A stretch of 64,000 bases of DNA from Asterias rubens (taxonomy: Eukaryota). Where the stretch lies: the NCBI RefSeq assembly GCF_902459465.1, contig NC_047070.1:18290001-18354000 (forward strand). Reading direction: 5' to 3'. The notes beneath the pieces are model-generated. The model saw nothing but the letters and a program-made list of their open reading frames with translations. It made no database searches and was not told the origin of the DNA. Positions within the stretch are counted from its first letter, which is position 1. Each line of letters opens with the position of its first letter. Of this stretch, positions 5,793 to 64,000 are shown piece after piece. The position numbers and the translations under genes were made by a program.

Positions 5793-8700
5793 CAGGTTAT
5801 TTTTCTCTCATCCAGCCAAAGTTTGAACCCAAGTTTAAACGTCAAATGTTTGTTTAAAACCAACCAGAGAAGCCAGTGGATTTTGTTCCCACAGTGTGAA
5901 ACACTGAGTACAATGTAAACACTGCATATCACACATCGATGCAAGGGTCAAACAAAAATAATATTTGTGTTTTTTTCACCAAACAGCAATTAAATAATGA
6001 ACAACAATGTCAATACTGTGATAATGGCACTAATTTCAATGACCCACACTTGAAAAGTTTTAAAAATAATGGAAATAAAACCAGGAAAAAAGCCGGGAAA
6101 TGAGTAAAAAATAACACATTATGATAGAATAACCCCCAGTGAAAGAAAGCATTTTTCCAAAGTTATGATTTATATTGCAAGCTCTACTAAGAGTTAAAAA
6201 AACTTGTTTCTAACTTGACACACACAGTATTCTATTAAAGAAGAAAATAAACAACATGCAATTTGTGGCTACAGGGAAAAGTATTCTTAAACGAAAAAAT
6301 ACAACAAAGTATTTGTCATATTTGTACAAAATACCTTATTTGAATCCCACCCTAGTAATGCCTGTAATATTTTTTTCACAGGACTCGGGGAAGTACTGAG
6401 TATACAGTGCTTACACATGGGTAAAAACCAAAATTAATATTATTGAATTCTGTTGAAAGCTCAACACGTATTTACCTACAATCCTTTAAATTAAAAAATA
6501 TGTGCGTCCGAAATGCATCTCATTTTGCACAAATCAAATACTGTAGCATTGAATATAAGAATCTTTTTGTTTCCATTTGGTAAAAAGAAAGTCTGAGTAT
6601 TAGCTGTAACTGGCAATTTGTTTCCAGGGCCCATTTTTACAGGAAAAGAAACCCCAAAACATGTATACCAGTATAAGGTTACAAACTAATAACGCATTTC
6701 ACTTCTTGCCAGGAAATATTGAGGACTTTTGTGGATTCGTTGTGCATGTTTTGTGTGCAACTTGCTTGTGGCTGCTAAAGTGTCTCCAAAGAGTGCCCTT
6801 TAATTTGTTTTTGGAATAAAAAAAACCTAATGATATAAATCCTAATAGATTAATATCTTCCATCATATAGAAACATGTACAAACCCTGTTTACTCCAATA
6901 TGTGTGCACATTTAAGATGCACACAGTATATATCCGGAGACACTTTCAACCAGAATCAATGGACCCTTTCCATGAAATATGCTAATCACATTCAGGCATG
7001 CGTACAGACCCTGTTGGTTGGCAAACGCCATAGAGTTGTGCACTAAGCAGACGCGCAATCGCGTCTGCGTCACACACCCATTAGCCAATGTACAAAACAG
7101 TGCGATGTTCCCTCATATTGCCAACCAAAACGTTAGTGTGCACGCCCTATGTGCAATTTACATATTTCATGAAAAGGGTCTATTCACCCTTCCCTTAAAG
7201 AGATATTTTCACCAAAGAAAATAAAACAATCTGAAATCTTCAAATATGTAGATTGACCCAAATGAAAACAGTTACAACCAACCCACAATCTACTTTATGC
7301 TAACAATGAACTTGTGAAACTCAGTAAAACAAGGACAAGACAATTTCAAATCACGATTACACTGTGTCAGTCATAGAAGTTAGATTTTTGTGCTCACATG
7401 ATAAAACATCTAAAACTTTGAGTCAGAGGATAGCAATTTTCATACTGTAACATTTAAATGAATACAAATTTGTTGGTCTTTATCTTTTGACAAGAGCATG
7501 ATTTGAGCAGTCTGGCTAAAAAGTTACTCTCTGAATTTGTTGTCTGTCTTAAAACAAAAACAAACTCATCACTAAAAAGAAGGTGGAAACCTAAATAGAA
7601 ATATCAAAGGTTTTCTACAACCCCAAAATGAAAATTGTAGGCTTAATTTGTTGGTGCAGAGAAATCCAAAAGTATGAAGAAAACCTTTAGAAATTCGCTA
7701 TAAAAACCAATATTGCATTAAAACAAAAAATTTAAAAGAAAAACAAAAGGAAGAAATAATATAGAATTAGTCATTTTTAAAACAACACTGTAATGTTATA
7801 CTGAGCCCTTTGAAGCACAGCTAAATAAATCGTTATGGCAAATTAAATAAATACATAAACTGGCAATGGTAGGGCGGCCCAAACCATTTAATTCAAACCT
7901 ACAACTTGAGCACTATACAACTCTGCTGGTTCCATGATCTTACATAGCAAATCATGAAACTAAAACTTGCAAATCACCATTTTCCCCTTCTCTATTATTT
8001 TTTTATATAACTTCAAACCATTTTTTCCTCACTGCTCAAACGGTTACTAACAAGCTTAATTTCCCTCTCTTTGATTATGTGCATTCATGCATTTCCAACA
8101 CAAATGTTAAAACAGTCAGCATGCAAATAATCATCGGCTCCTTTTGCTTTGGAGCTATCATTTTTTGCCGACGCACAAATATATGGATGAAATATCAATA
8201 CTAAAACAGAACCACTCAAACACAATATGCTTTGTGAGTACAAGTATGTAAATTAACAGCAAAAGTATCACTGCAGTTTGCAAACTCTGCTGAAATTCCT
8301 ACAGAAAATTCCTGTTTCTTTTCAAACTAACCATCTAAAGTAAACCTTGTTGGTTCTAATAGAAAAGCAGTTAAGCACCTATCTTTTGCTAAATCTGGGG
8401 TTTCTCCCTGAATTTTGCAAGGGTGACTAATCCCATTCCCCCCCCCCAAAAGGGAAAGATTTTACACTCTGCGTCTCAGCAATCCAATTCACTGACTGAG
8501 TGGAAAATTATAGAGTACCTTCTTTCAAAGGAGAATCTTGGGTTCATACAATACTTTTTTTAATTTTTTTAGTTTTTTTATGAAGAAACATTCAACTACC
8601 AAAGTGTACGTGTAATTTAAAATCACACAGTATTTTGATTTCATACAAAATAATACAAAGTTGCACTGTATATAGGGAGTACGTCAAGTTTGTTTTCAAT

Positions 8701-41208: not shown

Positions 41209-42135
41209 TTATTGGGAAAAGACACTCGCAAGAGCACGTCGAAACTGTCGGTTGGAAATCCCATATAAAAGTGGATTTATAGCAGAGCTACTGTACATGA
41301 CAAAATGTGTGACAGTCAAAACCATAAAGCTCCTCTCGTCAACGTTATCAACGACGAAGAATTGAGGAATCGAACTGAGGCAGTGGTAAAGTACAACCAC
41401 GAAGAGCAGGATGGTTGGCCGGACCTGGCGCTTCCATCGACCCGTCTCATGTCGCACTCCGATGGTGCTGATTGAGTCCTCGTTAGTCTGTTCCGTTGAT
41501 GTGGGTAATTGTGGTGTCGGCCGAATTTGAACTGCGATGGCCCGCATGTGCTTTCGCATCACCACGAAAATACTGCCATAGGTGCCGATAAACACGGCAA
41601 CGGAGACGAGCCTGTTTCCCAGAAGGAAAATCCTATAGAAAGAAGATGGCACCAAATCGATGAAGCGGCAACTGTTATTGTTCTCATCAGATGGTGCCGA
41701 TATTGAAAGCAAGACAGGGATGACAACACCACAAATGACACCAAAACTGTAGATGAGTATGATTACTACGACAGCTCTCTTTTCTGATAGTACTCTGCAA
41801 GCCGTTAGTGGACAAGTGATTGTCAAATAACGCTCCACGGTCAAGGCGAGGAGAGACCAGATGACAACGTATGCCAGCACAAGAAGAGAGTACAGAAATG
41901 GCAAGCAAACTGTTTTAGACGAAACTACACCGAGATCCACCAGGCACTGCAACGGGTAGAAGAGACCCACTATCAAATTCCCGAAAGACAAACTGGCAAA
42001 GAAATAGTTACTGATAGTCAAGATGTCCTTCCTACGAATGAAGACAAAAATCACGACGGTGTTTCCAATCGTGGACAAGCCACAAATCAAAACGCAACAT
42101 ATTACGGAAACGGTAATTTCTAAGACGCTACTCAT
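41209..42135 (-). CDS. Intronless rhodopsin-class (class A) GPCR, adenosine-receptor-like/orphan, 308 aa
   Basis: Seven hydrophobic segments; GN in TM1, LTVERY in TM3, NPLLY in TM7, helix-8 FRRA; ECL2 CRFIDLV. The ORF track starts at a TTG (42165); first ATG is 42135. Confidence 0.9.
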   Translation of the reverse strand: MSSVLEITVSVICCVLICGLSTIGNTVVIFVFIRRKDILTISNYFFASLSFGNLIVGLFYPLQCLVDLGVVSSKTVCLPFLYSLLVLAYVVIWSLLALTVERYLTITCPLTACRVLSEKRAVVVIILIYSFGVICGVVIPVLLSISAPSDENNNSCRFIDLVPSSFYRIFLLGNRLVSVAVFIGTYGSIFVVMRKHMRAIAVQIRPTPQLPTSTEQTNEDSISTIGVRHETGRWKRQVRPTILLFVVVLYHCLSSIPQFFVVDNVDERSFMVLTVTHFVMYSSSAINPLLYGISNRQFRRALASVFSQ

Positions 42136-44292
42136 AGTTTTGTTTTTGGGAGGAAAAAACCCCAATTCACCCTCATGAGTAAACTTTCACCTGAAGATGT
42201 TGAAAGTGCAGTTGAAGCATGGAGCAAGAAAGCAAGTAATTCGGACGCCAAACTCGCCACACACAATACGAGCTCAAAAACGATAGACTTGTGACGAAAT
42301 AATTGCATTCAGCCCATACCCTAAGATCACTGACGCACGTCTTACAACTGACGTAAAATCATTGCCCGCAGCCCATGACTTTTAATACTGATTAATGTCA
42401 GAAAATAAAGATCTGTGTTGAGAAGTGCGAGGGACTATTTTCACAAGAGAAACAAAAACGCATGAAAATACACGTATAGTAAAAATAATAATAAGGTATT
42501 GGCATTTATAATAGCGGCCCAAGATCGAGCGCTTTAAATACATACAAACAATGACAAAGATACAACAACAAAAAACAGTAGAAAAACAGTTCAAGGAAAT
42601 ATAATAAGAACTATAAGGGCTATTATAGGAACGTCTTGAAGATGTATTGCGAATTATTCATTTACTCCTTATGAAGAAATAATCCTTATTATTCTGTTTC
42701 TTAAAGTATATAATGACTTTATTGGTGATTCATATCATACTTTATCTGACAGTCCCCGATCTCGTGACCCGTTCATCAATAGTTTTACCTTTTCAAGAAG
42801 GTGATGAAAGAGGTATCTCAGTGACATTCAGCAAGACATTATACATGTTTCTTGTGTGTGCTCATATTTCGGCACTCTGGGAATTTGGATTATTTAAAGA
42901 CAATTTACTTTCACTGCAGTTTTTGGTGCTCCGCTTGTTGCCATTCTCGTTTAAGTAGTCTGAGGTGTCCCCCCCCTTCAATAAAACCATACATTTCCAG
43001 GGCGGTTTCCATCAGTGGTTAAATTTGTACGGTACTACATTCTGTACCGACGGCAAAGCATCATAACCAAACGATAAAGCCTGATTAATGGATTATATTA
43101 TGGTGTGGTTGTTGTGGATTTGGCTTAATTTAAGCTTATTGCTTTTGGTGCGTAAAAATAAGTGTTTGAACTGCCCTAGTTGTAAATGTTTCGCTCGATT
43201 AATGTGGTGGTCAGGGAGAGAAGGAAACGAGTCAGGGTCAGGTCATTTCACGACAGCATGATCCATTTAGGGGTCAAACCCAGACCCCGATTTAGAAAAG
43301 AAAGGACTAAAAAAATGAGTCAAATTGACCACTTCACTGTATACACTAAAATGAATATAAACTGTGGAGTGGAATTACGAAAAACATAAACAAAGTACTC
43401 TTAACCAGACCAAGTCATGTTTTTAGTGTCAATGGCCTATAGTCACCCACTGATAGTAAAATTGTCAGCTCCAGGGTTCGACACAAAAAGAAACCTGTAC
43501 CAGGTACGAAAATAGGAGAAAAAAAAAATCATTAGTGAAGCTTCCACACCTCACCATTGAAGTTAATCACAGATTAATTCATAACTCCTATTCAAGTGGG
43601 AGTTGTTTACCGAGGCCGAATGGTAGAGCCCTGGGCAGTTTTATTGAAACCTCAACAGCGTGAGTGAACGCGTCGGTTGTAAAATTGGTCACATTGTGTG
43701 AGCGAAATTGTTACGAATAAACGTGAGTGGCTGTTTCCTTAAATGAAGCAATCTGTTTTTTTCCCCCTGATTGTGCCATTGCAAGATGTCCCATGTGAGG
43801 CAATTAGGGTGCAGCTTCTGAGAATGTTAAACAATAAAGAGGTGACAAATACGGCAGCACTTCCCACGTGAAAGACACAACGCAAGGGAAATTAGCACTG
43901 GATTATCGCTCGGTGTTAAACAAAGGTCATTTAAAGAGTATTACAACTCATACTCGTAATCCAACGAAATGCAGAGCGTAGGCGTGTCTAGACCTATTAT
44001 ACAGTTTAAAAAGAAAGAAAACAACATCAACAAACACAATTTTTTGTTACCTAGAAAATTGATGTTTTTTTCTGTGAGTTTTTTTTGCAAAAGAAAACAA
44101 ACCCTGAAGACACTCTGGATAACCATGGGATAACTAAACCCCATTTAGCGGGAGCTCAATATGCAAAAGTAATTCTATGAAATCTTTACAATATTGCACC
44201 AATTCGGAGCAGACGATGTTTTCTGTCTGCACTGCAGGCTAGCTAGCGCCCTCTGTAGCTTTAACTCGCCAAATCTATCATCCCAATCCATC

Positions 44293-50495: not shown

Positions 50496-53400
50496 TTACA
50501 TACCTTGTTTCTCCAGCCACTTGCCGACGCTATCCAAGTCCAACAAGTATGACTGGTGGTACACATCCTCACTCGCAGCTCTCAATGAGGAGTTTTTCCA
50601 CTTGATGGGCGGAGTCGACTCCTCCAAGTAGCTATCAACCAACCTCAAGATATTCCTCGGACCTGCAGAGTTTGGCGCCAACACAAGATCGTTATTGATG
50701 AAGCTCAGCTTTACAGTGCAGGTGCTTCGTTGCTTGTGTTTGGCGACAATTTCGAGTGTGTGGGCGTCCGTTAGGAAGCTTTCCATCGTAAGATTCACCT
50801 CCCCGGCTGTTAAATCAAACAAGAGGCACGCTTCGTGGTATTTCTGGTCTTTCTTGAACTTAATGTAGATGCCATTGTTGAAGCCACGTGTGTGAAGTTG
50901 ACGAGCATATTGCTGTTTGTAATCGGTGCCGGTGTTCCATAGGACACTGATCAGCAAGCGATAGTTGCGCTTTTCTAGCGTCATCGCTCGCTCTGTCTGC
51001 ATCTCCTGGTAGATTGAGAAGTACGCCTTGTTGCGACTGTCAAGGGACGCGAAAAGCACTTGGTTGAACAATGAAGTATATCGTTCATCTGTATTAGAAG
51101 GAAAATAAAGGTCAACTGATAAAGAGTTTGGTTTTGGATCAGATTGTGTAAGCAATAATTTAACAGGGAATGGCGTAATTGGTGGTGAAAGTATTTGTAA
51201 CTACAACAAACCAAGTCAAGCCAACATTTGATTAAAGGCTATATACAACAAATAGTCATAAGAAAAGGAAATAGAAACTTATACCAGTAAATTTAGCCTA
51301 TCCAGGCCACTATTGGATTAAAGACTCTAGACACTAAATAGTAATAAAAAAAGGGAAAATAAATTGTTACCAGTAAACAAAGCTTAGCCAGCTCTAGAAA
51401 CTAAATAGTAATAATATTAAAGGAAATAGAAACTGATACAAGTAAACGATACCTAGCCAAGTCAACATAGGTTTAAAGACTCGGACACTCAATAGTATTA
51501 TAAAGGGAAATGAAACTGATATATTTAAAATAAGCTTAGCCAGGACATCACTAGATCAAGGACTCTGGACACAAATAGGCCTGGAGTAGAAACTGATACA
51601 AGTAAACTAGATTAAAGACTCTAGAAACTAAATCCCAATAATATAAAAGGAGATAGACATTTATACAAGTAAACTATTCCTAGCTAGGCCCATATTAGAT
51701 TAAAGACTCAAGACACTAAATAGTTATATAAAAGAAATACAAACTTTTACAAGCAAACATTAGCCTAGCCAGGTCAATGTAAGATTAAAGACACTAAAAT
51801 AGTAATATAAAAGGAATGGAAATAGGAACGTATTCTGCTCAGCAGAAAACTTTACACAATATTTTTTTAATTTTATATTACTGATACTGAGAGAGCTGAA
51901 GCCATACCCAAAGCCAAAATTTCATTAACAAGTCAAAATCAAAAACACATTTCTAGCCAAAGTCTGACACCCCGCAGGGATACTCACAATGGTTCTGTTT
52001 ATGAAGATGCTTCAAGGGGACCAGACTCTGCGAGAAGGCTGACTTATCAACACACAATCTTACAAGCTGTTCCAACTTCTTGCAGCTGAGATGGAACAGT
52101 GGATTGTGACTGCCTTCATCTTCTTCATCAATTGAAACATTGATGTTTGGATCTAGAATTGACAGAGAAAAAAAAATAAAGAAAAAAAAATAAACCACAT
52201 AGGAAACTGACTGGGTAAGTTTCAAATAAATTTAATTTGTTTTTTTTTAGACAAAGATAAATTGGCTTGAGTGGGACTAAAACCTATGACCTCCAACTTG
52301 GTGTAATCTATGGCAGTTACACCTTGAATGGCTTGCACCCACGAACGAAGATATTGACAAAATAGGCAGACCGCCAACATTAGGGTTAGGTAGCTCAGTT
52401 GGTAGAGTGCAGGCAGGTTTAATCCAGTGGTCGCTGGCTAGTCAGTTTTTCTTTTGTTCAACCCAAAATTAGATTTCTATTTCCTCACCTGCCAATAACT
52501 GCGTTGCATATTTCGGCTCTCGGACCTCGAGGCACACCTGGGACACCAAGGCAACCCACACCTCCGAGACGTCCCAGTTGAAGAGCTTCAACTTGGGATG
52601 CGGGACCAGGATGTCGGAACCGAGCTCCTGCAGGTATGGGAAGTGGTTGGTAGAGAGGCAGTCCAGGATGTAGAAGGCCTGTTGCCATTGATGGGTGGAG
52701 CAGCACATTGCTAGGCAGTTGATACCAAGACGGGAGAGGACACGAACGAGGTTCACTGTGGCAAGAGTGACAAGTTGGAAGTCAGAAGAAAAACAATTTG
52801 GTATTCAGTGGATGAGGTGGTCTTTTCCAAAACAGTTTTTCTCTAGTCTCCAATGGCAAAAGAATCAGAATATCAAAACCTTGGCTTGTCTGGCTGTTTT
52901 TAACAAGCTTCTGCTTATTTCCAAACAACCCTATTCTCTTTTAATTACATTTATGTTTACTGTTACTTAATGTTATTTTTGAAATTTAAATTGAATTGGG
53001 GGAGTTTTTTTTTTTATACATCACTTTGGGTAGTAAAATAGCCTGCTAATATTATTGTTGTTGCAATTTTAGAAATCCTTGTGACAGAGGGTGGGATAGG
53101 TCGGAGAGAATACACAAACACTGAAACTCCAGTTCCTAACCATCCTTGAAGTGCCGACTGAAAACAGTCACAAAATTGTTGAATTTGGAGCCAGCCATGT
53201 CGGCAGGCTCAACAAGCTTCTTCATCAATTCCTGGATGACCGGTTTAGCCCTGGCCACATCCGGCCGTCGTTGACAGAGATCCAAGAGGGTGTCTCTGGT
53301 GTCCTTCCACATGGTACACTGCTGGATGGAGAAAGATGCCTCAAAGACCTCACTTGGGCACTTCTTACTGTCCGAGTCCATCAGTTTTCTGGCCGGATCG

Positions 53401-56400
53401 ACGGTGCTGCTGGCAAAATGTTTTGAAGACAAGGTAAAAAAGACTGCTGATTATCAAGTATAGAAAAAATAACTTTTATTCCAACCTCGAGTTTACTTTA
53501 CACTAGCAATAAAATCATTAAATGACAGCACAACAATAAAACTAACTTGATAATTCAGGAAACTTACTTGTTGTTTTCAAAGTCTATCTCCATAGTTGAT
53601 GTTTCTTGTACATTCTGGGTTTCATTCAGCTTGTTGAGGTCAAAAGAAAAAGTATTAATAAAACCAAAACAAATATTGCTACCGTACTTCACAAAATTCA
53701 CAATTTGTCAATGAAAGTAAAACTACAAATTGAACCAATACTTCTAAAATTTGTTTCGAGTTTTTTTTTTTCTTTTCGGTTCTTGTTAATTATTTTTTGG
53801 TTGTACAATTTTTGTCATGATGTATGTTTTTATTGGTTGAACACTTACTGCAGTCACAAGTGTTTGAAGAGTGTTGAGATCGTTTTCCTTCTGCAAAGAC
53901 GTCTTGATGCCATTGATAATGTCTGGGGAAGGCTGGGAAAAGACATGGCCAAAGGATTCAGAGATATTGATTTATAGATTGGTTGAATTTATTCGGATAA
54001 AACTAGGCCGAAAAGACAATAAGAAGTACATGCAAGATGAACCAAAGTAGAACACAGAAGAAAGCTGCACAAAATTATCCAAGAATAACCCCCAAAAGCA
54101 GTAACTTACACTTATTTAAATTGGCAAACAAATGGCAAAAACACCAACAAGAAATGGAAATAACAAAAACAGACAAATAAATCAGTGTATTGGTAAAAAA
54201 CCAAAATTCATAAAAACAGACAAAGTTACACAAGAGCAAAAAGATGAATAGCGGAAAACAAAGCAAGAAAACACAAACAAAATAAATAAGGTAATACAAG
54301 GTAAAAGCTTTTGCAACTTGATGTTATCACCAGTGTGGTTTCATTTGAAACTTACCAAACAATTGAAAGCTTTCCTCTTGATGATCCCCATGACTAGGTC
54401 ACACAGAGGGTGGATGTGGTTCAGCTCAAGAAGCATTCTCCCCATTCGATTAATTAATGCCATGTTCATATCAGTCATGTTGGGCTTCATCGGTAATAGA
54501 TTATTGAACACATTCATTGCCCTGAGAACATACAATTATTATTAATATTATCTATAATAATAATAATAATAATTTATTGATCTTATCTTGCGCTCTCTCC
54601 AGGACCAGCCTGTTCGAGGGCGCATGACAGTAAAAATTAAGAAAATGACATACAGTAAGTGAAAAGTTTAAAAAGTACACCCGTAAAAATATATAAGCAA
54701 AGTAGATAAACAAGTTTACAAGCAAAAAAGAGCATTAACACCATAAAAAAAAAAAAGGCTGTGAAAACAAAATTCGGCCATTTCACAAACTACAATAATA
54801 TAAAATATTTGCGAACAAAAGTATAGCTATAGGAAAAAATAAATAAAACATGTTGTACAGAACTACATTCAGGCATACAGGCTAAATAGAAAGTAAAGCA
54901 CAGGTCCCAAGTGAAGATGACTGACACCAAGGTTTGGTTACTACAAGGAACATGTGAAGAATAGATGAGAGATGGGGGTAGATTGGTAAAGACAGGAAAT
55001 GGGGTGAGAGAGGGAACAGCGGGGAATTAGGAACAGAGAAAACCAATTTCAAGCTGGCCAGGATTAACAGTCAATCAAAAAAGCTGTTAGCAAGATCAAG
55101 GCCCAATTTCATGGCTCTGCTTACATAAGCAAGAAATTGGCACATCAAAGGGAGGGGGGAATTTTTCCCTTACGTTAAGCATGTTTCATAGCTTAGCAGG
55201 GAATTTTTGCTTGTGCCTGTGCATACTCCAAGTAACTAGGCATTTTTCGCTAGCAAAATTTCAGTGCTTGCCCAGTAAGCAAAGAATGGTGCTCACAAGC
55301 ACAGAGTTCAGCTGTGAGCACAGTCATGAATTTGGGTCTAAGATGGTTGCCAAGGGGGTCCCAGAACTTGGAGTCATTTAATTTACTAAAGCGTCAACTT
55401 TGATTTTTCCAGTTTAACTAGGACAAAATCACTCACTTTGAGGGAAATATTAGTTGCCTCTTGAGATTGTTTTGTAAGAAGTAGGACTGCTTATAATTTT
55501 TTAAAATTTATTTTGTTTATACCCTTAAAGAGTTTTATTCCAATTTCTTATATAACATATACATAACCACACAAACCATTTGTTAAACCAAGCTATTTTT
55601 AGAACAGTATGTAAAGAAGTATGGCAAATGAAAAAAGTTATAAAGTTGACTTACATGAGGTGGAAGGTTGCTGGGTCGCCAGTTTGGCCATCCTGCAGGA
55701 GATGTTTGATGAGCAACATACACTGGGCTGTACAGTCGTACTGAGGGATGTGGGAGATCTCCTCAAGAATGCAATAAGCAACCTGGGAAGAACAAAGCTT
55801 TTCAATCATTTGCCATCCCATTTGAATAGTGCATAAAATACTGGAAAAACAGTTATCTTATGTGATAAAATGAACGAGCAAATTTGCAGGAAAAAAGTTA
55901 TAATAAACAGATTAAGAATGCTTAGGAAAAATACAATTGCTTTTTAATATTATAATTACTTACAGACCACTTGGCAGGATCTCTTACGTTCTGTCCACAA
56001 CATCCATGTAAGATCTGCACCATCAGGGGCAGGCTGGAGGCACGTGGAAGACCAGTCCTCTGGAACTCCTGCCAGGCTTTACTAACATGCCCCCAGCGAG
56101 AGAGGTCTAGGATGAAGTCCACGGCGTTCTTTGAGGTTAGAAGGTTCTGAGAGACTCCCCTGTACTGGGGGTTGTAAAACTGCGGAGGTGCTTGTGGGTG
56201 CGGGTAGTGACTAAGGGTGCTGGGGTGCATTAAGGCTGAATGGGGGACAGCAGAACCTTCATATAATTGGGTATGAGGCTGGAACTCAGAAACCGGGTGT
56301 TGGGGATAGTGGGACGCTGGAGGAGGAGGAGGAGGAGGAGGAGGGGGAGGGGATGGGTAAGGGGATGGAGTATGGATGTTGGATTGTTGGGTTCCAATGT

Positions 56401-59400
56401 AACTAGGATGATTTGACATCATGACTTGTCCCATAATTCGACTACCAGTAGATGGTGGTTTGTTTGCTTGTTGTCCATTGTTGTCCCCCTGTAGAGGAAC
56501 AATAACATTGATTATCTTATGTAGTCCTGGCTGATTTCCTACCTTCAACCAAGGTAGCAGTTACTAACCAGGACAGTTCTTTTCAGAACTGAGTAGTCTC
56601 CCAAATTCTGAACATCTCCTCCGCGGTAGAAGAGAAGTCTCCTGAATTCCCAAAAATTTGCTATAGAATTATATAGCAAGACATTATCTCCAATAAGAAC
56701 ACATGGTGATAACACAAACCAAAACTACTAAAGAAAGCTTAAAGGGGTTGGGTATTTTTTGTAGGACAAAAAACACAATGTCCACAGATTTACATTAAAC
56801 TAACACGGTTTGACGGTTGCTGCCATCACCAACACCTACATTAAGATACCAACCAAACCATTATAGCTATACATACCTGACAGGACTTTGGTGCTTCAAG
56901 TAGAGCATGCCTGAACATGCATCTCTGGCGTCGGCAATGACCAGTACGTACATATTCAAAGCAGTACCCCTTTGGTATGACCTACAAAAACACCAAGTAT
57001 TAATTCATAATCACTAAAAGCTTTTTCAAGATAAGTGTTTACTCCTTAGATCTAACAAAGAGTTTTCAGTCCTTGAGTCTTTGAGGTGTCGTGGACTCAG
57101 TGTCATAATAACACCCTGGGCCCAACTTAATAAAGCGTGTTAGCACAATAGCTTGCTAAGCTGAGAAAAGTAAAGCTTCACAAAAACAGGTTACCAGCCA
57201 AATTACATTAAGTTTACATTGTTGTGAGTGGTGCCCCACTCAATATTTGCTTAGCAGATAAATTTGTCAATCATTTTTTTCTGGTTAACAGCTTCATGTA
57301 ATAGGGTCCAGGTTTTGAACCAAGTACCTTCACGCCTAGAGCACAGAACTGTTCCACTAGGCCACTGCTAATGGGATAGAAACCTTCAAGGTCAATGTAA
57401 GGTTTATTCATAAGAACCTAAAAGTTCTTTAGGTAAGTGCTCACATTACAGTATGAAAAATACTTAACTAATAGCATTAGTACTAATATAGAATAAAACA
57501 ACCACTTGCCTGATTTGCCATTGCTAAGCCTGTCCAAGGCGCTGCTTGGGGCTGGTTGATGCCCAAAATCTTCCCCTCAATATTCCTGTTCACCCTGCCT
57601 GCACTGGAGATGGAACAGTCCCCACCAGTAAGGCTGTTGATTGGCTGATACTGTGAAACTTCGGACCAGTCCACTGTTTGGAGGGAAGCATTTCCATTGA
57701 TGGGCCTCACTGAGTCACTGTCAGCGTTGTTAGTCCCCTGCCGAGAATTGGCGTGTCGTGACGAATAACCACCCGCTTGTCTCTTCTCTGATTGGCTGGT
57801 TGGAGGGGGGGGGGGGGAAAGGTTAACAAAAACATTACTTTTAAAAGGTCCAATGTTTAGGAATTAGATTCACTCATATGATTGGAAGAGGGGCTCCAAG
57901 AAAACTGGGAACTCAAAAACACTCAAGTTGTCATAACTCACCCCATCTGTTTGTCTATCTCAAGAAGCTCATCACCGAAGTCATCCAGGAACCCCGGTGA
58001 GTCACAGAGTAAGGACAGGCAATCCTCCTCGGGAAACTCAAAACTATCCACCAGGGGAGACAGAATAATGTCCCCTAGGCCAATGGACAAATCCTGCGGA
58101 TCCTCTTCATAGTTTGCCGCTGCAGGATCAACTTGAATAAAATGAACAATAGAATATTAATTTTGGTTTAACCCATATACATCGATGTTTGTTAGCACTG
58201 TATATTCAGTACCTTGAAAGATACACAGGCATTTTTCACAGAGCTCTGGAACGTATTGAGCATACATTGCTAACACACATCAGTGTATACGGGTAAAACC
58301 AAAATTAATATTCTTTATCCCCAATGCAAAGCTCCATCCATTATTGTACTTTTGTAACAGAAAATTATAATGAAGAATGTAATGATAATGATTACCTTCA
58401 ATTGAGTAAAAACTCAATACAAATTGTTTCATAATGTTAAAAAAACAAAAAAATATACAGTTTACTATCCCCTTGGAATCAAAACAGTACAGTGACATCA
58501 GACTACGTACTTGATCTAAGCAAGACAACGAAAAATGTATAGCCATGAAGATTTTTTTTTAAACTGGTACCCATTTATCTAGTTTAATGCTTCCATCTGA
58601 ACTACTGTGTAAAACGATGCCCTCCAGCTTTTACAAACAATCCTTGTACCAATTAACAGAAGTAAAAATGCATCAGTTACAGACAGAAAAAGACTGCAAC
58701 AGCTGGATAGAAGACAACACAGAACAATGTATCACAAAGGGAAATGAGTAGAAAAGATTACCTGGTCTTGGACTTTCTGAAATTTGTTGGAACGGAGGAG
58801 AACTTGCATGGTACTGCTGCAACACCTCTCGTCCCAGATCAGGCATAGATAAAGCTGTTTGGGATGAGGGAGGGGTACTTCCTTTAGATGCAGTCTCGCA
58901 AGAAGCTGGTACGGAAGCACAGTTCTTAACAGGCAATATCTCCTCAGACTTGCTTTCTAATCGGGAAGGTGCAAGTCTATTGCTTTCTTTATCCAGCGCA
59001 TTAGAAAGTGCCTGTTTTGCAGTCTCAACTTGCTCTTGGTTCATCAGAAGATCTTGACCACTGATCCGTTGCTCAGGATTCAAGAAAGGACTTCGACCAT
59101 CAACCTGTTGTGTTGGGTTAAGCAGAGGAACTTGAACCTCAGCTTGCTGTGCTGGGCTCAATACATGATCTTGACATCCATTTAGCTGCTCTGGGATCAA
59201 CAAAGGAGTTTGACTGCCAACCTGCTGGTCTGGACTCAACAAAGGAGTTTGACCACCAACCTGCTGCTCTGGGCTCAACAAAGGAGTTTGACCACCAACC
59301 TGCTGCTCGGTTCTTAACAAGGGAGTTTGACGACCAACCTGCTGCTCTGGGCTCAACGACGGAGTTTGACCACCCACATGCTGCTCTGGGCTCAACAAAG

Positions 59401-62400
59401 GAGTTTGACTGCAAACCTGCTGCTTTGGACTCAACAAGGGTGTTTGACCACCAACCTGCTGCTCTGGACTCAACAAAGAAGTTTGACCATCAACCTGCTG
59501 CTCTGGGCTCAACAAGGGATTTTGCCCGCCAACATGCTGCTCTGGGCTCAACAAGAGAGATGGACCGTCAACCTGCTTCTCTGGGCTCAACAACGGAGTT
59601 TGACCGCCAACCTGCTGCTCTGGGCTCAACATGGGAGATTGACCGTCAACCTGCTGCTCTGGACTCAACAAGGGAGTTTGACCGCCAACCTGCTGCTCTG
59701 GACTCAACAAGGGAGTTTGACCGCCAACCTGCTGCTCTGGGCTCAATAAGGGCGCTTGACCATCAACCTGCTGCTCTTGGTTCAACAACGGAATTTGACC
59801 ACCAACCTGTGGCTCTGGACTCAATAAGGGCAATTGGCCATCACCCAGCTGCTCTGGGCTCAACAAGGGTGTTTGAATATCATTGTGACCTCTAATCATT
59901 TCTTCTTGGCTAAACAGGCCCGACTGACCGCCAGTCTGCTGTAATGACGATGCTTGACCATCTACTTGTTCTGGGCTCAACAGATGAGTTTGACCACCAA
60001 CATGCTGCTCTGTGCTCAATGAAAATGTTTGCCAATCAACAAATGGCTCTTGAGAACTAGGAGGACTTGGACCATTACACTTCTGCTCTTGATTCAACAA
60101 AAAAGATCCATTTGAACCTTCCATGAAGGCATTACCTGTAGAAAGTACCAAATAAACTTGATAAAACTATGTGGCATTACTCAAAATTTAGAAAACTATT
60201 TCCCAGAACCCATCACAGTCTTTGGTGCGTTTTGGCGGTCCAATAAATGTTTCAGTTGATTTAACTATTGATTAATGACTAGCCATTGACCAAATCAGTT
60301 GGTTGGTTACAGCAGCAAAACTGCCGCCCCCCCCCTGATGCTGGCAGGTACTTGAATCTACAGGGAAAGAGTATTTAGTGGACAAATAGTTCTTAAAGGA
60401 TTGCAAAGTGACCTCAATTATAACATGTAAAAATAATTTTTTTACCTTGACTTTTAGAGTCTAATCTGTCATCATCTGAAGTGGTATCAGTTGAGCGCGA
60501 TGCCCTCCACATACTTCTAGACGATACCATATCATCGGAACAGCCGGTGAAAATGGGCGTACATCTTGCTCTGGCTTCCCCACCGGTGACCGGGATCCGT
60601 GGGAGTGTACGGAGCATATCCAGGGTGGACTGGCGGCTGCTGAACGATGGCATCATGTCCACTGGAGTGACGACTACTCTGACGGACGGTGACGCAATGA
60701 AGAAAGTGTCACTGCCGCAGATGTCCTCAGAGGAGCTCATCTCAACTGTGCTGCTGGCCACTTCCATTGATTCATACTCACTCAATAAGATGCTAACTGT
60801 AAGACACAAGACACATAATAAATACAAGGGTCACTTTCCATTTGAAAACATGACCATTACAAGAAGCTATTACAAATCAACAAAGAAAACCTTAAGTCTT
60901 AACCTCCGTTTTAAGTTAATTTTGAACAATAAAGAATCTGGCTTACTGTCATTCATTTTATTATTTAACCTATGATAATGGACCCAAAAGATTTTGTTTT
61001 AAATTTTTGTTTCAAACGTATTTTAAAAAAATCGAATTGAGCATCTTTACCAAATTTAGACACATTAAGCTACAAAATTTGTTCAGAAAAGCAGATGTAA
61101 AATACCTCAGTTATTGTCACTTGACTTTTAAAAGTTAATTTTGATTGCATAAGAATATAAACAATATCAAACAAACAATTTTGAGTCCAGAACTACAGCC
61201 GACGAACAAAGAACTGTTTTCATGAAAATGAATAAAGAACTGTTTTCATAAAAATTCCATCAAACCTTGGTTTTCCAGTTCGCTGTCAATATCCATAGCA
61301 GTTGCAGAATCAGCAGTTGATGTATTAACCTCCAACCCACATGAGGAAAGCTTAGTGGAAGGTCTGATGTTGGACTTCCCAGATCCTTGAAGTGCCCTTG
61401 GAACGAAGCAGCCTTCATACCTTGGGGTCACAGGCAGGTCGTCTGTTGAGACAACTTCAACAGTGTGGGCAACCTCCGGGGCCTCCACAATCTCAATAGG
61501 AGGGGCTGATAAGTTGGTAAGAAAAGAAGGTTTTTATTTAATAGATGTGAAACTTGCATTGGGGATAAAGAATATTAATTTTAACCTATACTGGTGTGTG
61601 TTAGCACATGTCTTTAAGAGCAGGGGGATAAACCCAAATCAACTGTCTTTTCAATTTCTTAAGTTCATATTTTAACTATTATTTAATATATGCATTATTC
61701 TCTAAATATGTGCGTTTTAAGACTAACTTTCTTTGTAATTGTTTGAACCAGTGAAGCATCTATTTGACAGCAGTATTTTTTGTTATAAATCCTTTCAAAT
61801 CCTGTATAATAACTTTGAAGAGAAAATGTTTGCAAATATGCTTTAAAGGTAAGGTACATGATTGGTAATTATCAGAGACCAGTGTTCTCACTTGGTGTAT
61901 CCCATCATAAGAATTTATAAAGAAACAAGCCTGTGAAAATTTGGGCTCAATTGGTCATCGAAGTTGCGAGAAAATGATGAAAGAAAAAACACCCTTGTTG
62001 GACGAATACAATATGTGCTTTCAGATAAGAATAAAAGACTTCTAGCTAGAAGTCTTTTATTATTTTAGTCAGAAATTATCTCTTTCTCAAAAACTACGTT
62101 ACTTCAGAGGGAGTCGTTTCCCACAATGTTTTTTTTACTAACAACAGCTCTCCAATGCTCATTACCAAGTCAGTTTTTAGGTTATTATTTTTACCTTTCC
62201 TTTAAAGGCACTGGACACTATTAATAATTACTCAAAATAATTGTAAGCATAAAATGTTACTTGATGAAGAGCTGTTGAAAGTATAAAACATTGTAAGAAA
62301 AGGCTCCCTCTGAAGTAAATTAGTTTTTGATAAAGAGGTAATTTTTCACTCAAATATTAAAAGACTTCAGACCCGAAGCCTTTTATATGCATATGAAAGC

Positions 62401-64000
62401 ACACAATAAATGTGCACCAAGGTTGTCTTTAATTATTCTCTTTCAACTTTGATGACCAATTGAGTCCAGATTTTCACAGATTTTTGTTTATGCATAATTT
62501 GGTCTTTGACAATTACCAAAGGTTTCCGGTGCCTTTAACAATTCATGAATAAAGAGTTTACAAAAATTCTTTAATTGCTACGTACCCGAGTTAGGTGTTC
62601 CACTTGAGTATTTAATTCTTCCTTCAGATACAGATCTCCGCTCTCCATCCAAACTTCTCTTGGGCAATGTTGACCGATGACAACCATCCATAGTCCGATC
62701 CATGGTGGCAGAAGTAAGCTCAGATGGGATCTGGAATCCAAGGCGGTTCCACGTCTCTTGAATAGCCTCCAAGCCCTTCGTCATTCTCCGAGCAATTGTG
62801 GCAATCGACATCACTTTGCGCCTCCGGGTCCAAGCATGTTTCACACGCCTTTTGCTGGGCGATGAGAATTTTTTTGAAGCGATTGCGTCCAGGGGGATGG
62901 TTTCTCTGAACTTGAGTCGTGACAGCTGGACCGTGGGTTGATTTGTTAAAATCTCTGCGAGAGAAACTTTCCCCAGAATCCTACTCCAGATGTATTGTTC
63001 ACTTCCATCTACATGAGGCACTGTAGAGCCAGTTGTTGCAGCATCACCACAGGCATCTGAGCTCGACTTCAGACCCTTCTCTTTTCCGTCCTCATAACTT
63101 GACAATTTGGACACTTGGGCATCACCAGATGGACCTGCCACCCGGTCACCTTCGGAGCACATCCTTGGTTTTTCAGGGGGGCTGGTTGAAAACCTCTTTT
63201 TAAATGGTTTCCTCTTTAGTTTACTGATAGCGTTATTCTGTCCTCCATCATTTGTCTTCCTCCTCTTAACTTTAGGCAGAGTTTCACAAACTTCATCTTC
63301 GTCGGTATCACCTTCATGACCATGTACACTGCTCTCCTTGGATTCCTGTACCCTCATCAAATGGAGAAAGTTTATTTCATCTTTCGAGATACTTTCCTCC
63401 AAAATGGTGTTCTCCTGCGATTGTGCATCTCCGTTAAAAACACCAGCTTCAGGAGAGATTCTTTTGGGAGTATTTGATCGGAAAACCACGGCGGATCTTG
63501 ACTCGTCTACAACAGCATCACAATTGGTATTCTCCTCACCTTTGTCTTGCGTTGATGAGGAGTAGTCTGTCGAGACCGTCTCTTTACTAATGGGTTTCCT
63601 CCGTCTCTTTCGAAGACCTCTTGGCTTCTTCAAAACTAAGTCACATTGTTTATGGACAGACTTTGAGGTATCTCTGGGAGGCAATTTGTGTACCTTGGAA
63701 TCCTTTTCAGTATGATCCTCACCAGCTTCTGATGAAAGGAATGCCTCTTGAGAAATCGTTTCTCTCCTCTTCCAACCGGCTTGTCTTTCCTCGATACGGG
63801 ACTTGTTTCTGGTTGGTGCACTGTGCTTTGTAATTGCTTCATTTTGTACATCAAAATCCTTTCCACTATAATTTTCTCCAGACTGCTTTGTGGGGTCAGA
63901 TAAGTTGTCTCTAGCAATATTTCTTGACCGTGTGATAACAGCTTGTGCCTCTTGTACAATGGCATCACAACGACCTGGATTTGTTATGGAGGCATCATTA
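50496..64000 (-). CDS. TOPAZ1: TOPAZ1-like germline protein: long disordered N-terminus, CCCH finger, helical C-terminal domain; 5' end lies outside the window
   Basis: Phase-consistent exons: >64000-62586, 61505-61266, 60796-60446, 60135-58762, 58131-57942, 57795-57510, 56981-56877, 56488-55964, 55782-55655, 54521-54356, 53932-53849, 53629-53568, 53409-53141, 52755-52489, 52152-51988, 51088-50496. VLSRLGINCL...QW, YTSLFNQVL, RLLISVL and YLLDLDSVGKWL resemble vertebrate TOPAZ1 C-terminal segments (from memory). C-x8-C-x4-C-x3-H finger in exon 56877-56981. Confidence 0.78.
51190..51830. repeat. Degenerate tandem repeat (about 75-90-bp unit, 7-8 copies) in the last TOPAZ1 intron
   Basis: Recurring GATTAAAGACTCTAGACACTAAATAGTAAT...AAAGGAAATAGAAACT.ATACAAGTAAAC...CCTAGCCAGG. 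Confidence 0.75.
59030..59875 (-). repeat. Coding minisatellite, 39-bp (13-aa) unit, about 21 copies: PLLSPEQQVGGQT
   Basis: Read directly from ORF 58673-60151. Confidence 0.95.
61843..62538. mobile_element. Two Kolobok-like MITEs in inverted orientation sharing one TTAA (62202-62205)
   Basis: Copy 61843-62205 and copy 62202-62538, each TTAA-bounded, in opposite orientations inside a TOPAZ1 intron. Confidence 0.8.

What the first reader, a model, noticed from the sequence alone, without database searches (positions are those of the whole stretch)
58269..61605. Reverse-complementary intronic pair brackets three frame-symmetric TOPAZ1 exons: candidate RNA-structure switch or circRNA
Seen: AAAATTAATATTCTTTATCCCCAATGCAA (58301-58329) has an exact 29-nt reverse complement at 61554-61582, extended by an 11-nt arm (58269-58279 / 61595-61605). 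The pair encloses exons 61505-61266 (240 nt), 60796-60446 (351 nt) and 60135-58762 (1374 nt). All three are phase 1-1 and multiples of 3. The upstream arm ends 49 nt before the 61505 acceptor, close to where a branch point is expected. Established: flanking reverse-complementary intronic matches promote exon skipping and back-splicing. Inference: pairing could remove the whole 655-aa disordered block, including the phospho-repeat array, in frame. It could alternatively yield a 1965-nt circRNA with a stop-free, endlessly open frame. A fragment of the motif also occurs near 6420-6445, so it may come from a dispersed repeat.
Basis: partly seen in the sequence, partly recalled or inferred. Interest (0 to 1): 0.72.

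Follow-up and report, generated by a model that had tools for sequence, protein, structure and literature searches.

The report
Inverted SINE fragments flanking three exons
The 29-base reverse-complementary match is real, but it comes from two broken copies of a repeat present thousands of times in this genome that happen to sit in the introns either side of three exons; the RNA data available show only the normal linear transcript, so this is an ordinary by-product of repeats until a circular or exon-skipped RNA is actually seen.

Summary
There is an exact 29-nt inverted pair, 58301-58329 / 61554-61582, plus a second arm. It brackets three exons that are all phase 1, have AG/GT splice sites and read open for 655 aa.

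The arms are fragments of a high-copy tRNA-derived SINE-like repeat, and both lack the tRNA-like head. The 29-mer occurs 2,489 times at two mismatches or fewer, equally on both strands. A neighbouring 35-mer occurs 4,642 times. The two fragments carry different substitutions and indels, so they are separate copies, not a local duplication. In 11 of 42 sampled loci the family has copies on both strands within 1.5 kb, so inverted neighbours are routine.

The pairing potential is real. A:B alone gives -82 kcal/mol. The downstream arm is also half of a local head-to-head hairpin (58151-58215 / 58250-58314), but even against that competitor A keeps 30-42 nt of B.

Spliced contigs from two RNA runs of one study carry all three exons in linear order across every junction. 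No skipping or back-splice joint was seen. However, contigs drop rare forms and the joint table was swamped by repeat joints.

Verdict: this is an incidental inverted repeat-element pair of the known IRAlu/MIR kind. A low-level circRNA is possible but not shown. The TOPAZ1 identity could not be verified.

The parts
61536..61607 (-). Arm A. A head-less fragment of the SINE-like repeat (consensus positions 302-381, 81% identity), in sense orientation within the transcript. It lies in the upstream intron (61506-62585) and ends 31 nt before the 61505 acceptor. It contains the exact 29-mer at 61554-61582.
   Evidence: (I4, I7)
58232..58344 (+). Arm B. A head-less fragment of the same repeat (consensus 267-379, 86% identity), antisense within the transcript. 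It lies in the downstream intron (58132-58761), 433 nt after the 58762 donor. It contains the exact 29-mer at 58301-58329.
58151..58215 (-). B'. A third fragment of the repeat (consensus 285-348), joined head-to-head with B. Together they form a local hairpin (65-nt arms, 85%, 34-nt loop). It competes with A for B and ends 20 nt before the 58131 acceptor. It lacks the last ~31 nt of the unit, which leaves 58315-58345 of B free for A.
   Evidence: (I2)
61266..61505 (-). Exon, 240 nt, phase 1-1.
   Evidence: the spliced contigs X3 rec19 and X4 rec22
60446..60796 (-). Exon, 351 nt, phase 1-1.
58762..60135 (-). Exon, 1374 nt, phase 1-1. It holds about 24 copies of a 39-nt (13-aa, TPLLSPEQQVGGQ-like) tandem repeat.
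   Evidence: (D1-D5)
61831..62538 (.). An unrelated, very abundant repeat element that folds on itself (inverted arms I1 119 nt, I3 57 nt, I5 39 nt). It fills most of the upstream intron. This is within-intron pairing and does not involve arm A.
   Evidence: depth about 10^6; more than 2,126 candidates at 94-96% identity

Best explanation
The pair is an accidental product of repeat-element insertions. Three head-less fragments of one high-copy tRNA-derived SINE-like family lie in the two introns around the three-exon block of a minus-strand gene. Fragment A is in the upstream intron. Fragments B and B', joined head-to-head, are in the downstream intron. A and B are in opposite orientation, so their transcripts can pair. 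The 29 exact bases are the best-kept, CpG-poor stretch of the family unit, in a minor 'CCCCAATG' subfamily variant that both copies carry. In the pre-mRNA, B is shared between its local partner B' (about 45-50 bp) and the distant A (about 30-42 bp). The gene is spliced mainly, perhaps entirely, in the normal linear way with all three exons included. Shown here: the repeat origin, the copy number, the independence of the copies, the predicted energies and the linear isoform. Inferred: that the pair has no selected function, and that any circular or skipped RNA it promotes is a minor by-product, as with most inverted Alu or MIR pairs in mammals.
For: Copy number and strand balance:
- The 29-mer occurs 1,227 times forward and 1,262 times reverse at two mismatches or fewer in the 417.6-Mb genome. 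The reversed control gave 0. There are 53 exact copies.
- The adjacent 35-mer occurs 4,642 times.
- The 201-nt query gave 2,093 first-look candidates, with copies at 85-90% identity on many chromosomes.

Family identity:
- The family consensus carries a tRNA-like head.
- ARAGORN calls a degenerate tRNA-Ser(aga) next to the 29-mer at 5 places in 4 of 11 loci (L013, L016, L019 and two in L020).
- The B-box GGTTCGAATCC lies within 170 nt upstream in 22 of 38 copies.
- Five head-less fragments lie in this window.

Independence of the copies:
- A and B differ by separate substitutions, and A has a 9-nt deletion.
- The best genomic matches of B are other 'A-variant' copies.
- Copies with an exact 29-mer but diverged flanks are common, 5 of 10.

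How ordinary the arrangement is:
- 11 of 42 independent loci have fragments on both strands within 1.5 kb, several as head-to-head dimers like B/B'.
- Uniform random placement of 2,489 copies alone predicts about 25 inverted pairs within 3.3 kb (my arithmetic).

RNA:
- The spliced contigs X3 rec17 and rec19 and X4 rec20 and rec22 run unbroken through 62586|61505, 61266|60796, 60446|60135 and 58762|58131.
Against: The pairing is strong: A:B gives -82.4 kcal/mol alone and about -32 kcal/mol extra when competing with B'. It also survives in the global MFE fold. Inverted repeats of 30-40 nt are reported to be enough for circularization in minigenes (Liang & Wilusz 2014, as cited in PMC11766002). 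An inverted pair of MIR SINEs drives ciRS-7 (PMC7371899). A and B are each about 14-19% diverged from the consensus, so a 29-nt run with no differences between them is longer than I would expect (roughly p ~0.01 by my estimate, made post hoc). The RNA evidence comes from contigs of one study. Contigs drop rare variants, 355 joints were not shown, and tissue and library type are unknown.
Confidence: 0.75

Rival explanations
1. The inverted SINE pair does promote back-splicing of the three-exon block into a 1,965-nt circRNA, or in-frame skipping of the block, at a detectable level in tissues where the gene is expressed. The route is the known intron-pairing mechanism. This may or may not have any function.
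For: One arm lies in each flanking intron, 49 nt from the 61505 acceptor and 433 nt from the 58762 donor. The A:B duplex gives -82.4 kcal/mol. In the global MFE fold, 42 nt of A pair with B despite the competing B'. All three exons are phase 1 and open, so skipping keeps the frame and a circle would have no stop. Published precedent exists for short repeats and for SINE pairs (PMC11766002, PMC7371899).
Against: The data laid here show no back-splice or skipping joint. The contigs cross all four canonical junctions without a break, which argues that alternative use of these sites is minor in those samples. Both flanking introns are short (1,080 and 630 nt) and each holds a strong within-intron hairpin: B:B', and the element at 61831-62538. 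Under the competition model of Zhang et al. 2014 (as summarised in PMC11766002), within-intron pairing favours linear splicing. The pair is explained by repeat density alone.
Confidence: 0.2
2. The two arms arose from a local duplication or from gene conversion between the two introns. On this view the exact 29-nt identity reflects recent sequence exchange within the locus, not family-level conservation.
For: Both copies carry the minor CCCCAATG variant, which is exact in only 53 of about 2,489 copies. They are identical over 29 nt although the flanks are diverged.
Against: Outside the 29-mer the copies differ: CATCAGTGTATACGGG in B against CACCAGTAT with a 9-nt deletion in A. They also continue differently 3' of the 29-mer, where A follows the family consensus better than B does. 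Nothing beyond the repeat unit is shared between the two sites. The CCCCAATG variant marks a dispersed subfamily, and its members are B's best matches elsewhere in the genome.
Confidence: 0.05

Closest known systems
Inverted Alu pairs (IRAlus) flanking circularized exons in primates (Jeck 2013, Zhang 2014; summarised in PMC11766002)
   Same: These are SINE copies in opposite orientation in the two introns around internal exons. They can base-pair across the exons, and they face competition from within-intron pairs.
   Different: The arms here are about 75-110 nt fragments of an unrelated tRNA-derived family, not ~300-nt 7SL-derived Alus. The flanking introns are short. No back-splice product has been observed.
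Inverted MIR (tRNA-derived SINE) pair needed for ciRS-7/CDR1as biogenesis (PMC7371899)
   Same: Old, fragmentary tRNA-derived SINE copies in inverted orientation flank the circularized sequence.
   Different: In ciRS-7 the circle is the main product and its dependence on the repeats was shown by deletion. Here the linear mRNA is the assembled product and nothing has been tested.
Short engineered inverted repeats, 30-40 nt, sufficient for circularization in ZKSCAN1, HIPK3 and EPHB4 minigenes (Liang & Wilusz 2014, cited in PMC11766002)
   Same: The length class matches the uncontested part of the A:B pairing, which is 30-42 nt.
   Different: Those were over-expressed minigenes with miniature introns. 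This is a native locus with a competing local hairpin.

Membership tests
tRNA-derived SINE family (the repeat the arms belong to) | tRNA-like head with internal Pol III A and B boxes | tested here: met
   This holds for the family. The consensus contains TAGTCTAGTTGGTAAGA and GGTTCGAATCC. ARAGORN calls a degenerate tRNA-Ser(aga) beside the 29-mer in L013, L016, L019 and L020. A B-box lies upstream in 22 of 38 copies. The window's own fragments A, B and B' lack the head.
tRNA-derived SINE family (the repeat the arms belong to) | High copy number, dispersed over all chromosomes, both orientations | tested here: met
   There are 1,227 + 1,262 copies of the 29-mer and 2,255 + 2,387 copies of the 35-mer, found on C1-C23 and on unplaced contigs.
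tRNA-derived SINE family (the repeat the arms belong to) | Defined 3' tail shared with a partner LINE, and target-site duplications | not tested
   Many copies are arranged in tandem at 259-bp and 55-bp periods. That is atypical for a plain SINE, so 'SINE-like' is the safe label.
Intron-pairing-driven circRNA locus (IRAlu type) | Reverse-complementary sequences, one in each intron flanking the circularized exons | tested here: met
Intron-pairing-driven circRNA locus (IRAlu type) | Back-splice junction in RNA (downstream donor 58762 joined to upstream acceptor 61505) | tested here: inconclusive
   None was seen among the joints shown for four runs. However, the data were contigs only, 355 joints were not shown, and repeat-derived joints dominated the table.
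Intron-pairing-driven circRNA locus (IRAlu type) | Dependence of the circle on the arms (mutation and compensatory rescue), and RNase R resistance | not testable with these tools
   This is a bench experiment.
   A C-x8-C-x5-C-x3-H motif lies at 56844-56981, but the Pfam zf-CCCH_2 hit is below threshold (E 0.045, 14.8 bits against a 25.8 cut-off). No Pfam family hit any of the downstream ORF pieces tested. HMMER with the 234-aa ORF 50499-51200 against 1.84 billion representatives gave 0 hits. The Atlas gave nothing. A spliced full-length protein could not be submitted.
   The 5' part of the gene runs off the window: contig X3 rec19 extends 5.6 kb beyond the upper end (63200) of the stretch laid. 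Run tissues are coded and unknown.

The most novel reading that the evidence does not exclude
In germ cells the SINE pair drives production of a 1,965-nt, stop-free circular RNA from the three-exon block. This circle is translated round and round into a repetitive TP..SP-rich polypeptide, or its formation titrates the output of the full-length protein. That would make a chance repeat-element pair into a regulatory device of a germline gene.
Probability: 0.04. Interest if true: 0.6.

Novelty: new member of a known kind. Interest (0 to 1): 0.17.

Why it matters
If a circle or an in-frame skipped form were found, this would be one more case of SINE-derived intron pairing shaping transcripts. It would be in a non-mammalian-looking repeat family and would remove a whole repeat-rich 655-aa block in frame. 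That is a useful locus for a minigene test but not a new principle. As things stand, the value lies in the negative result. An eye-catching exact 29-nt inverted match is fully explained by a repeat present thousands of times, so similar matches elsewhere in this genome should be checked against this family before they are given meaning.

Tried and rejected
- **Chance match in unique sequence.** Rejected: 0 of 100 shuffles gave a match, and the sequence is a repeat.
- **MITE with terminal inverted repeats.** This was my first reading of the hairpin at 58151-58314. I replaced it with 'head-to-head dimer of SINE-like fragments' once the family consensus showed a tRNA-like head and a one-directional unit.
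- **'The local hairpin fully sequesters arm B'.** Rejected: cofold and the global MFE fold both leave 30-42 nt of B paired with A.
- **Local duplication or gene conversion.** Judged unlikely.
- **RNA test.** Only one read-laying run was allowed and only contig-level runs were on offer. The joints table was saturated by repeat joints, so rare junctions could not be read. The second sequencing-run run was not used, because no further laying was possible.
- **Gene identity.** Two Pfam scans of ORF pieces, two Atlas searches and one exhaustive HMMER search gave nothing that confirms TOPAZ1. The 234-aa ORF used may not be coding at all.
- **Earlier notes.** A findings look-up for the word TOPAZ1 found no note.
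- **Conservation in related genomes.** Not testable here, because no relative's genome is reachable with these tools. X1 looks like a relative about 6% diverged, but it covers exons only.
Full report
**1. The observation**

The window holds an exact 29-nt inverted pair, AAAATTAATATTCTTTATCCCCAATGCAA, at 58301-58329 (+) and 61554-61582 (-). The 29-mer occurs nowhere else in the window, and none of 100 shuffles gave a match.

On the minus strand the three enclosed exons are 61505-61266, 60796-60446 and 60135-58762.
- Each has an AG acceptor and a GT donor.
- Each has a length divisible by three and is open only at offset 2, which is phase 1.
- Joined, they give 655 aa without a stop, including about 24 copies of a 13-aa TPLLSPEQQVGGQ-like unit.

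**2. What the arms are**

A genome search shows that the 29-mer is a repeat. It occurs 1,227 times forward and 1,262 times reverse at two mismatches or fewer in the 417.6-Mb assembly. The reversed control gave none, and 53 copies are exact.

The commonest form reads CCCCGATGCAA. Both window copies carry the minor CCCCAATGCAA form. The neighbouring 35-mer of the unit occurs 4,642 times.

I aligned 28 genomic copies and obtained a unit with two parts:
- a tRNA-like head, with TAGTCTAGTTGGTAAGA ... GGTTCGAATCCCAC;
- a body of about 150 nt that contains the 29-mer.

ARAGORN calls a degenerate tRNA-Ser(aga) beside the 29-mer in L013, L016, L019 and twice in L020. A B-box lies within 170 nt upstream in 22 of 38 copies. 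Some copies stand in tandem at 259-bp or 55-bp periods. I therefore call the family tRNA-derived and SINE-like, not a textbook SINE.

BLAST of the consensus against the window finds five fragments, all without the head:

| Fragment | Coordinates | Strand |
|---|---|---|
| – | 6339-6444 | + |
| – | 54181-54212 | + |
| B' | 58151-58215 | - |
| B | 58232-58344 | + |
| A | 61536-61607 | - |

**3. Are A and B independent copies?**

A four-way alignment of A, B, B' and the 6339-6444 copy against the consensus shows different private changes. B reads CATCAGTGTATACGGGTAAAACC, where A reads CACCAGTAT with a 9-nt deletion followed by AGGTT. Downstream of the 29-mer, A follows the consensus (GTTTCACATCTATTA) better than B does.

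The shared A-for-G difference marks a dispersed subfamily. B's best matches elsewhere, for example C1:2832527, C4:4675646, C11:5500809 and C19:11606017 at 89%, are the same loci that carry the exact 'A-variant' 29-mer.

Among ten copies chosen for an exact A-variant 29-mer, five have four or more mismatches in the adjacent 35-mer, or lack it altogether. So an intact 29-mer beside diverged flanks is normal for the family. A local duplication or gene conversion is unlikely.

**4. Is an inverted pair at this spacing unusual?**

Uniform random placement of 2,489 copies predicts about 25 inverted pairs within 3.3 kb genome-wide. This is my arithmetic.

Empirically the family clusters far more than that. 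In 42 independent ~3-kb loci centred on a copy, 11 have fragments on both strands. Several of these are head-to-head dimers like B/B'. Inverted neighbours are therefore ordinary for this family.

**5. Could the RNA pair?**

Yes. Energies for the minus-strand transcripts are as follows.

| Structure | Energy (kcal/mol) |
|---|---|
| A:B duplex | -82.4 |
| B:B' duplex | -75.0 |
| Local element folded alone | -80.1 |
| A alone | -4.9 |
| A cofolded with the whole B..B' element | -116.8 |

In the cofold, B' takes about 65 nt of B. A takes the roughly 30 nt that B' lacks (58313-58345). The gain is about -32 kcal/mol.

In the MFE fold of the whole 4,521-nt segment 58100-62620, 42 nt of A pair with B and 44-49 nt of B pair with B'. 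My first idea, that the local hairpin cancels the long-range pairing, is therefore wrong. These are equilibrium predictions. Kinetics, helicases and co-transcriptional splicing are not modelled.

Both flanking introns are short, 1,080 and 630 nt. Each contains a strong within-intron hairpin: B:B' in one, and the unrelated element at 61831-62538 with 119-, 57- and 39-nt arms in the other. Under the published competition model, within-intron pairing favours linear splicing (Zhang et al. 2014, as summarised in PMC11766002).

**6. RNA evidence**

Six runs hold part of the stretch. Four were laid in the one call allowed.

- X3 and X4 (one study) are RNA, because their contigs are spliced.
  - X3 rec19 (7,214 nt) and X4 rec22 run 59717-60131 | 60442-60796 | 61266-61505 | 62586-63200.
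  - X3 rec17 and X4 rec20 run 57509-57795 | 57942-58131 | 58762-59273.
  - The 4-nt offset at 60131/60442 is an alignment ambiguity (TTAC on both sides).
- X2 is DNA-like. Its contigs cross exon-intron borders.
- X1 is about 6% diverged.

So the assembled transcript includes all three exons in linear order, and the contigs pass every junction concerned without a break. This argues that alternative use of these sites is minor in those samples.

No 62586-to-58131 or 58762-to-61505 joint was listed. This is weak evidence of absence, for four reasons:
- contigs drop rare variants;
- the joints table was filled with repeat-derived joints, and 355 rows were not shown;
- tissue is unknown;
- a poly(A) library would miss circles.

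Depth over the arms is 10^4 to 10^5, and over 61831-62618 it is about 10^6. That confirms both stretches are multi-copy repeats.

**7. Mechanism and odds**

The best explanation (0.75) is an incidental inverted pair of repeat fragments, with the gene spliced linearly.

The main rival (0.20) is that the pair promotes a detectable circle or a skipped form by the well-known intron-pairing route. Repeats of 30-40 nt are enough in minigenes (Liang & Wilusz 2014, cited in PMC11766002), and an inverted pair of MIR SINEs drives ciRS-7 (PMC7371899). A selected 'switch' function is much less likely than mere detectability.

Local duplication or gene conversion gets 0.05.

**8. Gene identity**

The name TOPAZ1 was not verified. 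A C-x8-C-x5-C-x3-H motif lies at 56844-56981, downstream of long disordered exons. This fits the published TOPAZ1 layout of a divergent N-terminus, one CCCH finger and a conserved C-terminal ~620 aa (PMC3206057).

However:
- the Pfam hit is sub-threshold (E 0.045);
- no other ORF piece hit Pfam;
- two Atlas searches were blank;
- an exhaustive HMMER search with ORF 50499-51200 found nothing.

The ORF at 41209-42165 is a separate rhodopsin-type GPCR gene.

**9. Verdict**

The feature is real and has a mundane origin. It is a new instance of a known kind, an inverted SINE pair flanking exons, with no evidence of function. Interest is low.

Noticed in passing
window 61831-62538: Most of the upstream intron is a different, very abundant and young repeat. 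It gave more than 2,126 first-look candidates, the best 40 at 94-96% identity, and contig depth of about 10^6 in all four runs. It folds on itself through 119-, 57- and 39-nt inverted arms, so it looks like a MITE-like foldback element.
   Followed up: partly
window 58151-58344; also L004:1485-1638, L015:1431-1544, L042:1205-1331, L002:1483-1720: Head-to-head inverted dimers of the SINE-like unit, 5'-truncated and joined near consensus positions 267-285, recur at several unrelated loci. This suggests a recurrent way of forming them, such as template switching during insertion, or a palindromic subfamily.
   Followed up: partly
window 58134-58170 and 61508-61582 (minus strand): Two sense-oriented 3' parts of the repeat sit directly upstream of two acceptors of the same gene. 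B' ends 20 nt before 58131 and A ends 31 nt before 61505. The repeat's UUAAU followed by a pyrimidine-rich stretch places a branch-point-like A 25 nt before the 58131 exon. The repeat may therefore supply that intron's branch point and part of its pyrimidine tract.
   Followed up: no
G000:C16:13685840-13687199; G000:C1:3741729-3742534; G000:C4:713452-713926: Parts of the same repeat unit form long tandem arrays, with a 55-bp period on C16 and C4 and a 259-bp period on C1. So the family behaves partly like a satellite.
   Followed up: no
window 41209-42165 (-): An intron-less ORF of 318 aa with a full-length rhodopsin-family 7TM domain (7tm_1, E 8e-27). This is a separate GPCR gene downstream of the large gene.
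   Followed up: no
window 60846-61042: Run X3, but not X4, has contig depth of about 13 inside the intron 60797-61265. This could be a retained-intron piece or an unrelated contig. It was not resolved.
   Followed up: no
window 58992-60100: A 39-nt tandem array of about 24 units encodes TPLLSPEQQVGGQ-like repeats. Contigs from the RNA runs break inside it (between 59273 and 59717), so the unit number in the transcript is not confirmed by these assemblies.
   Followed up: partly
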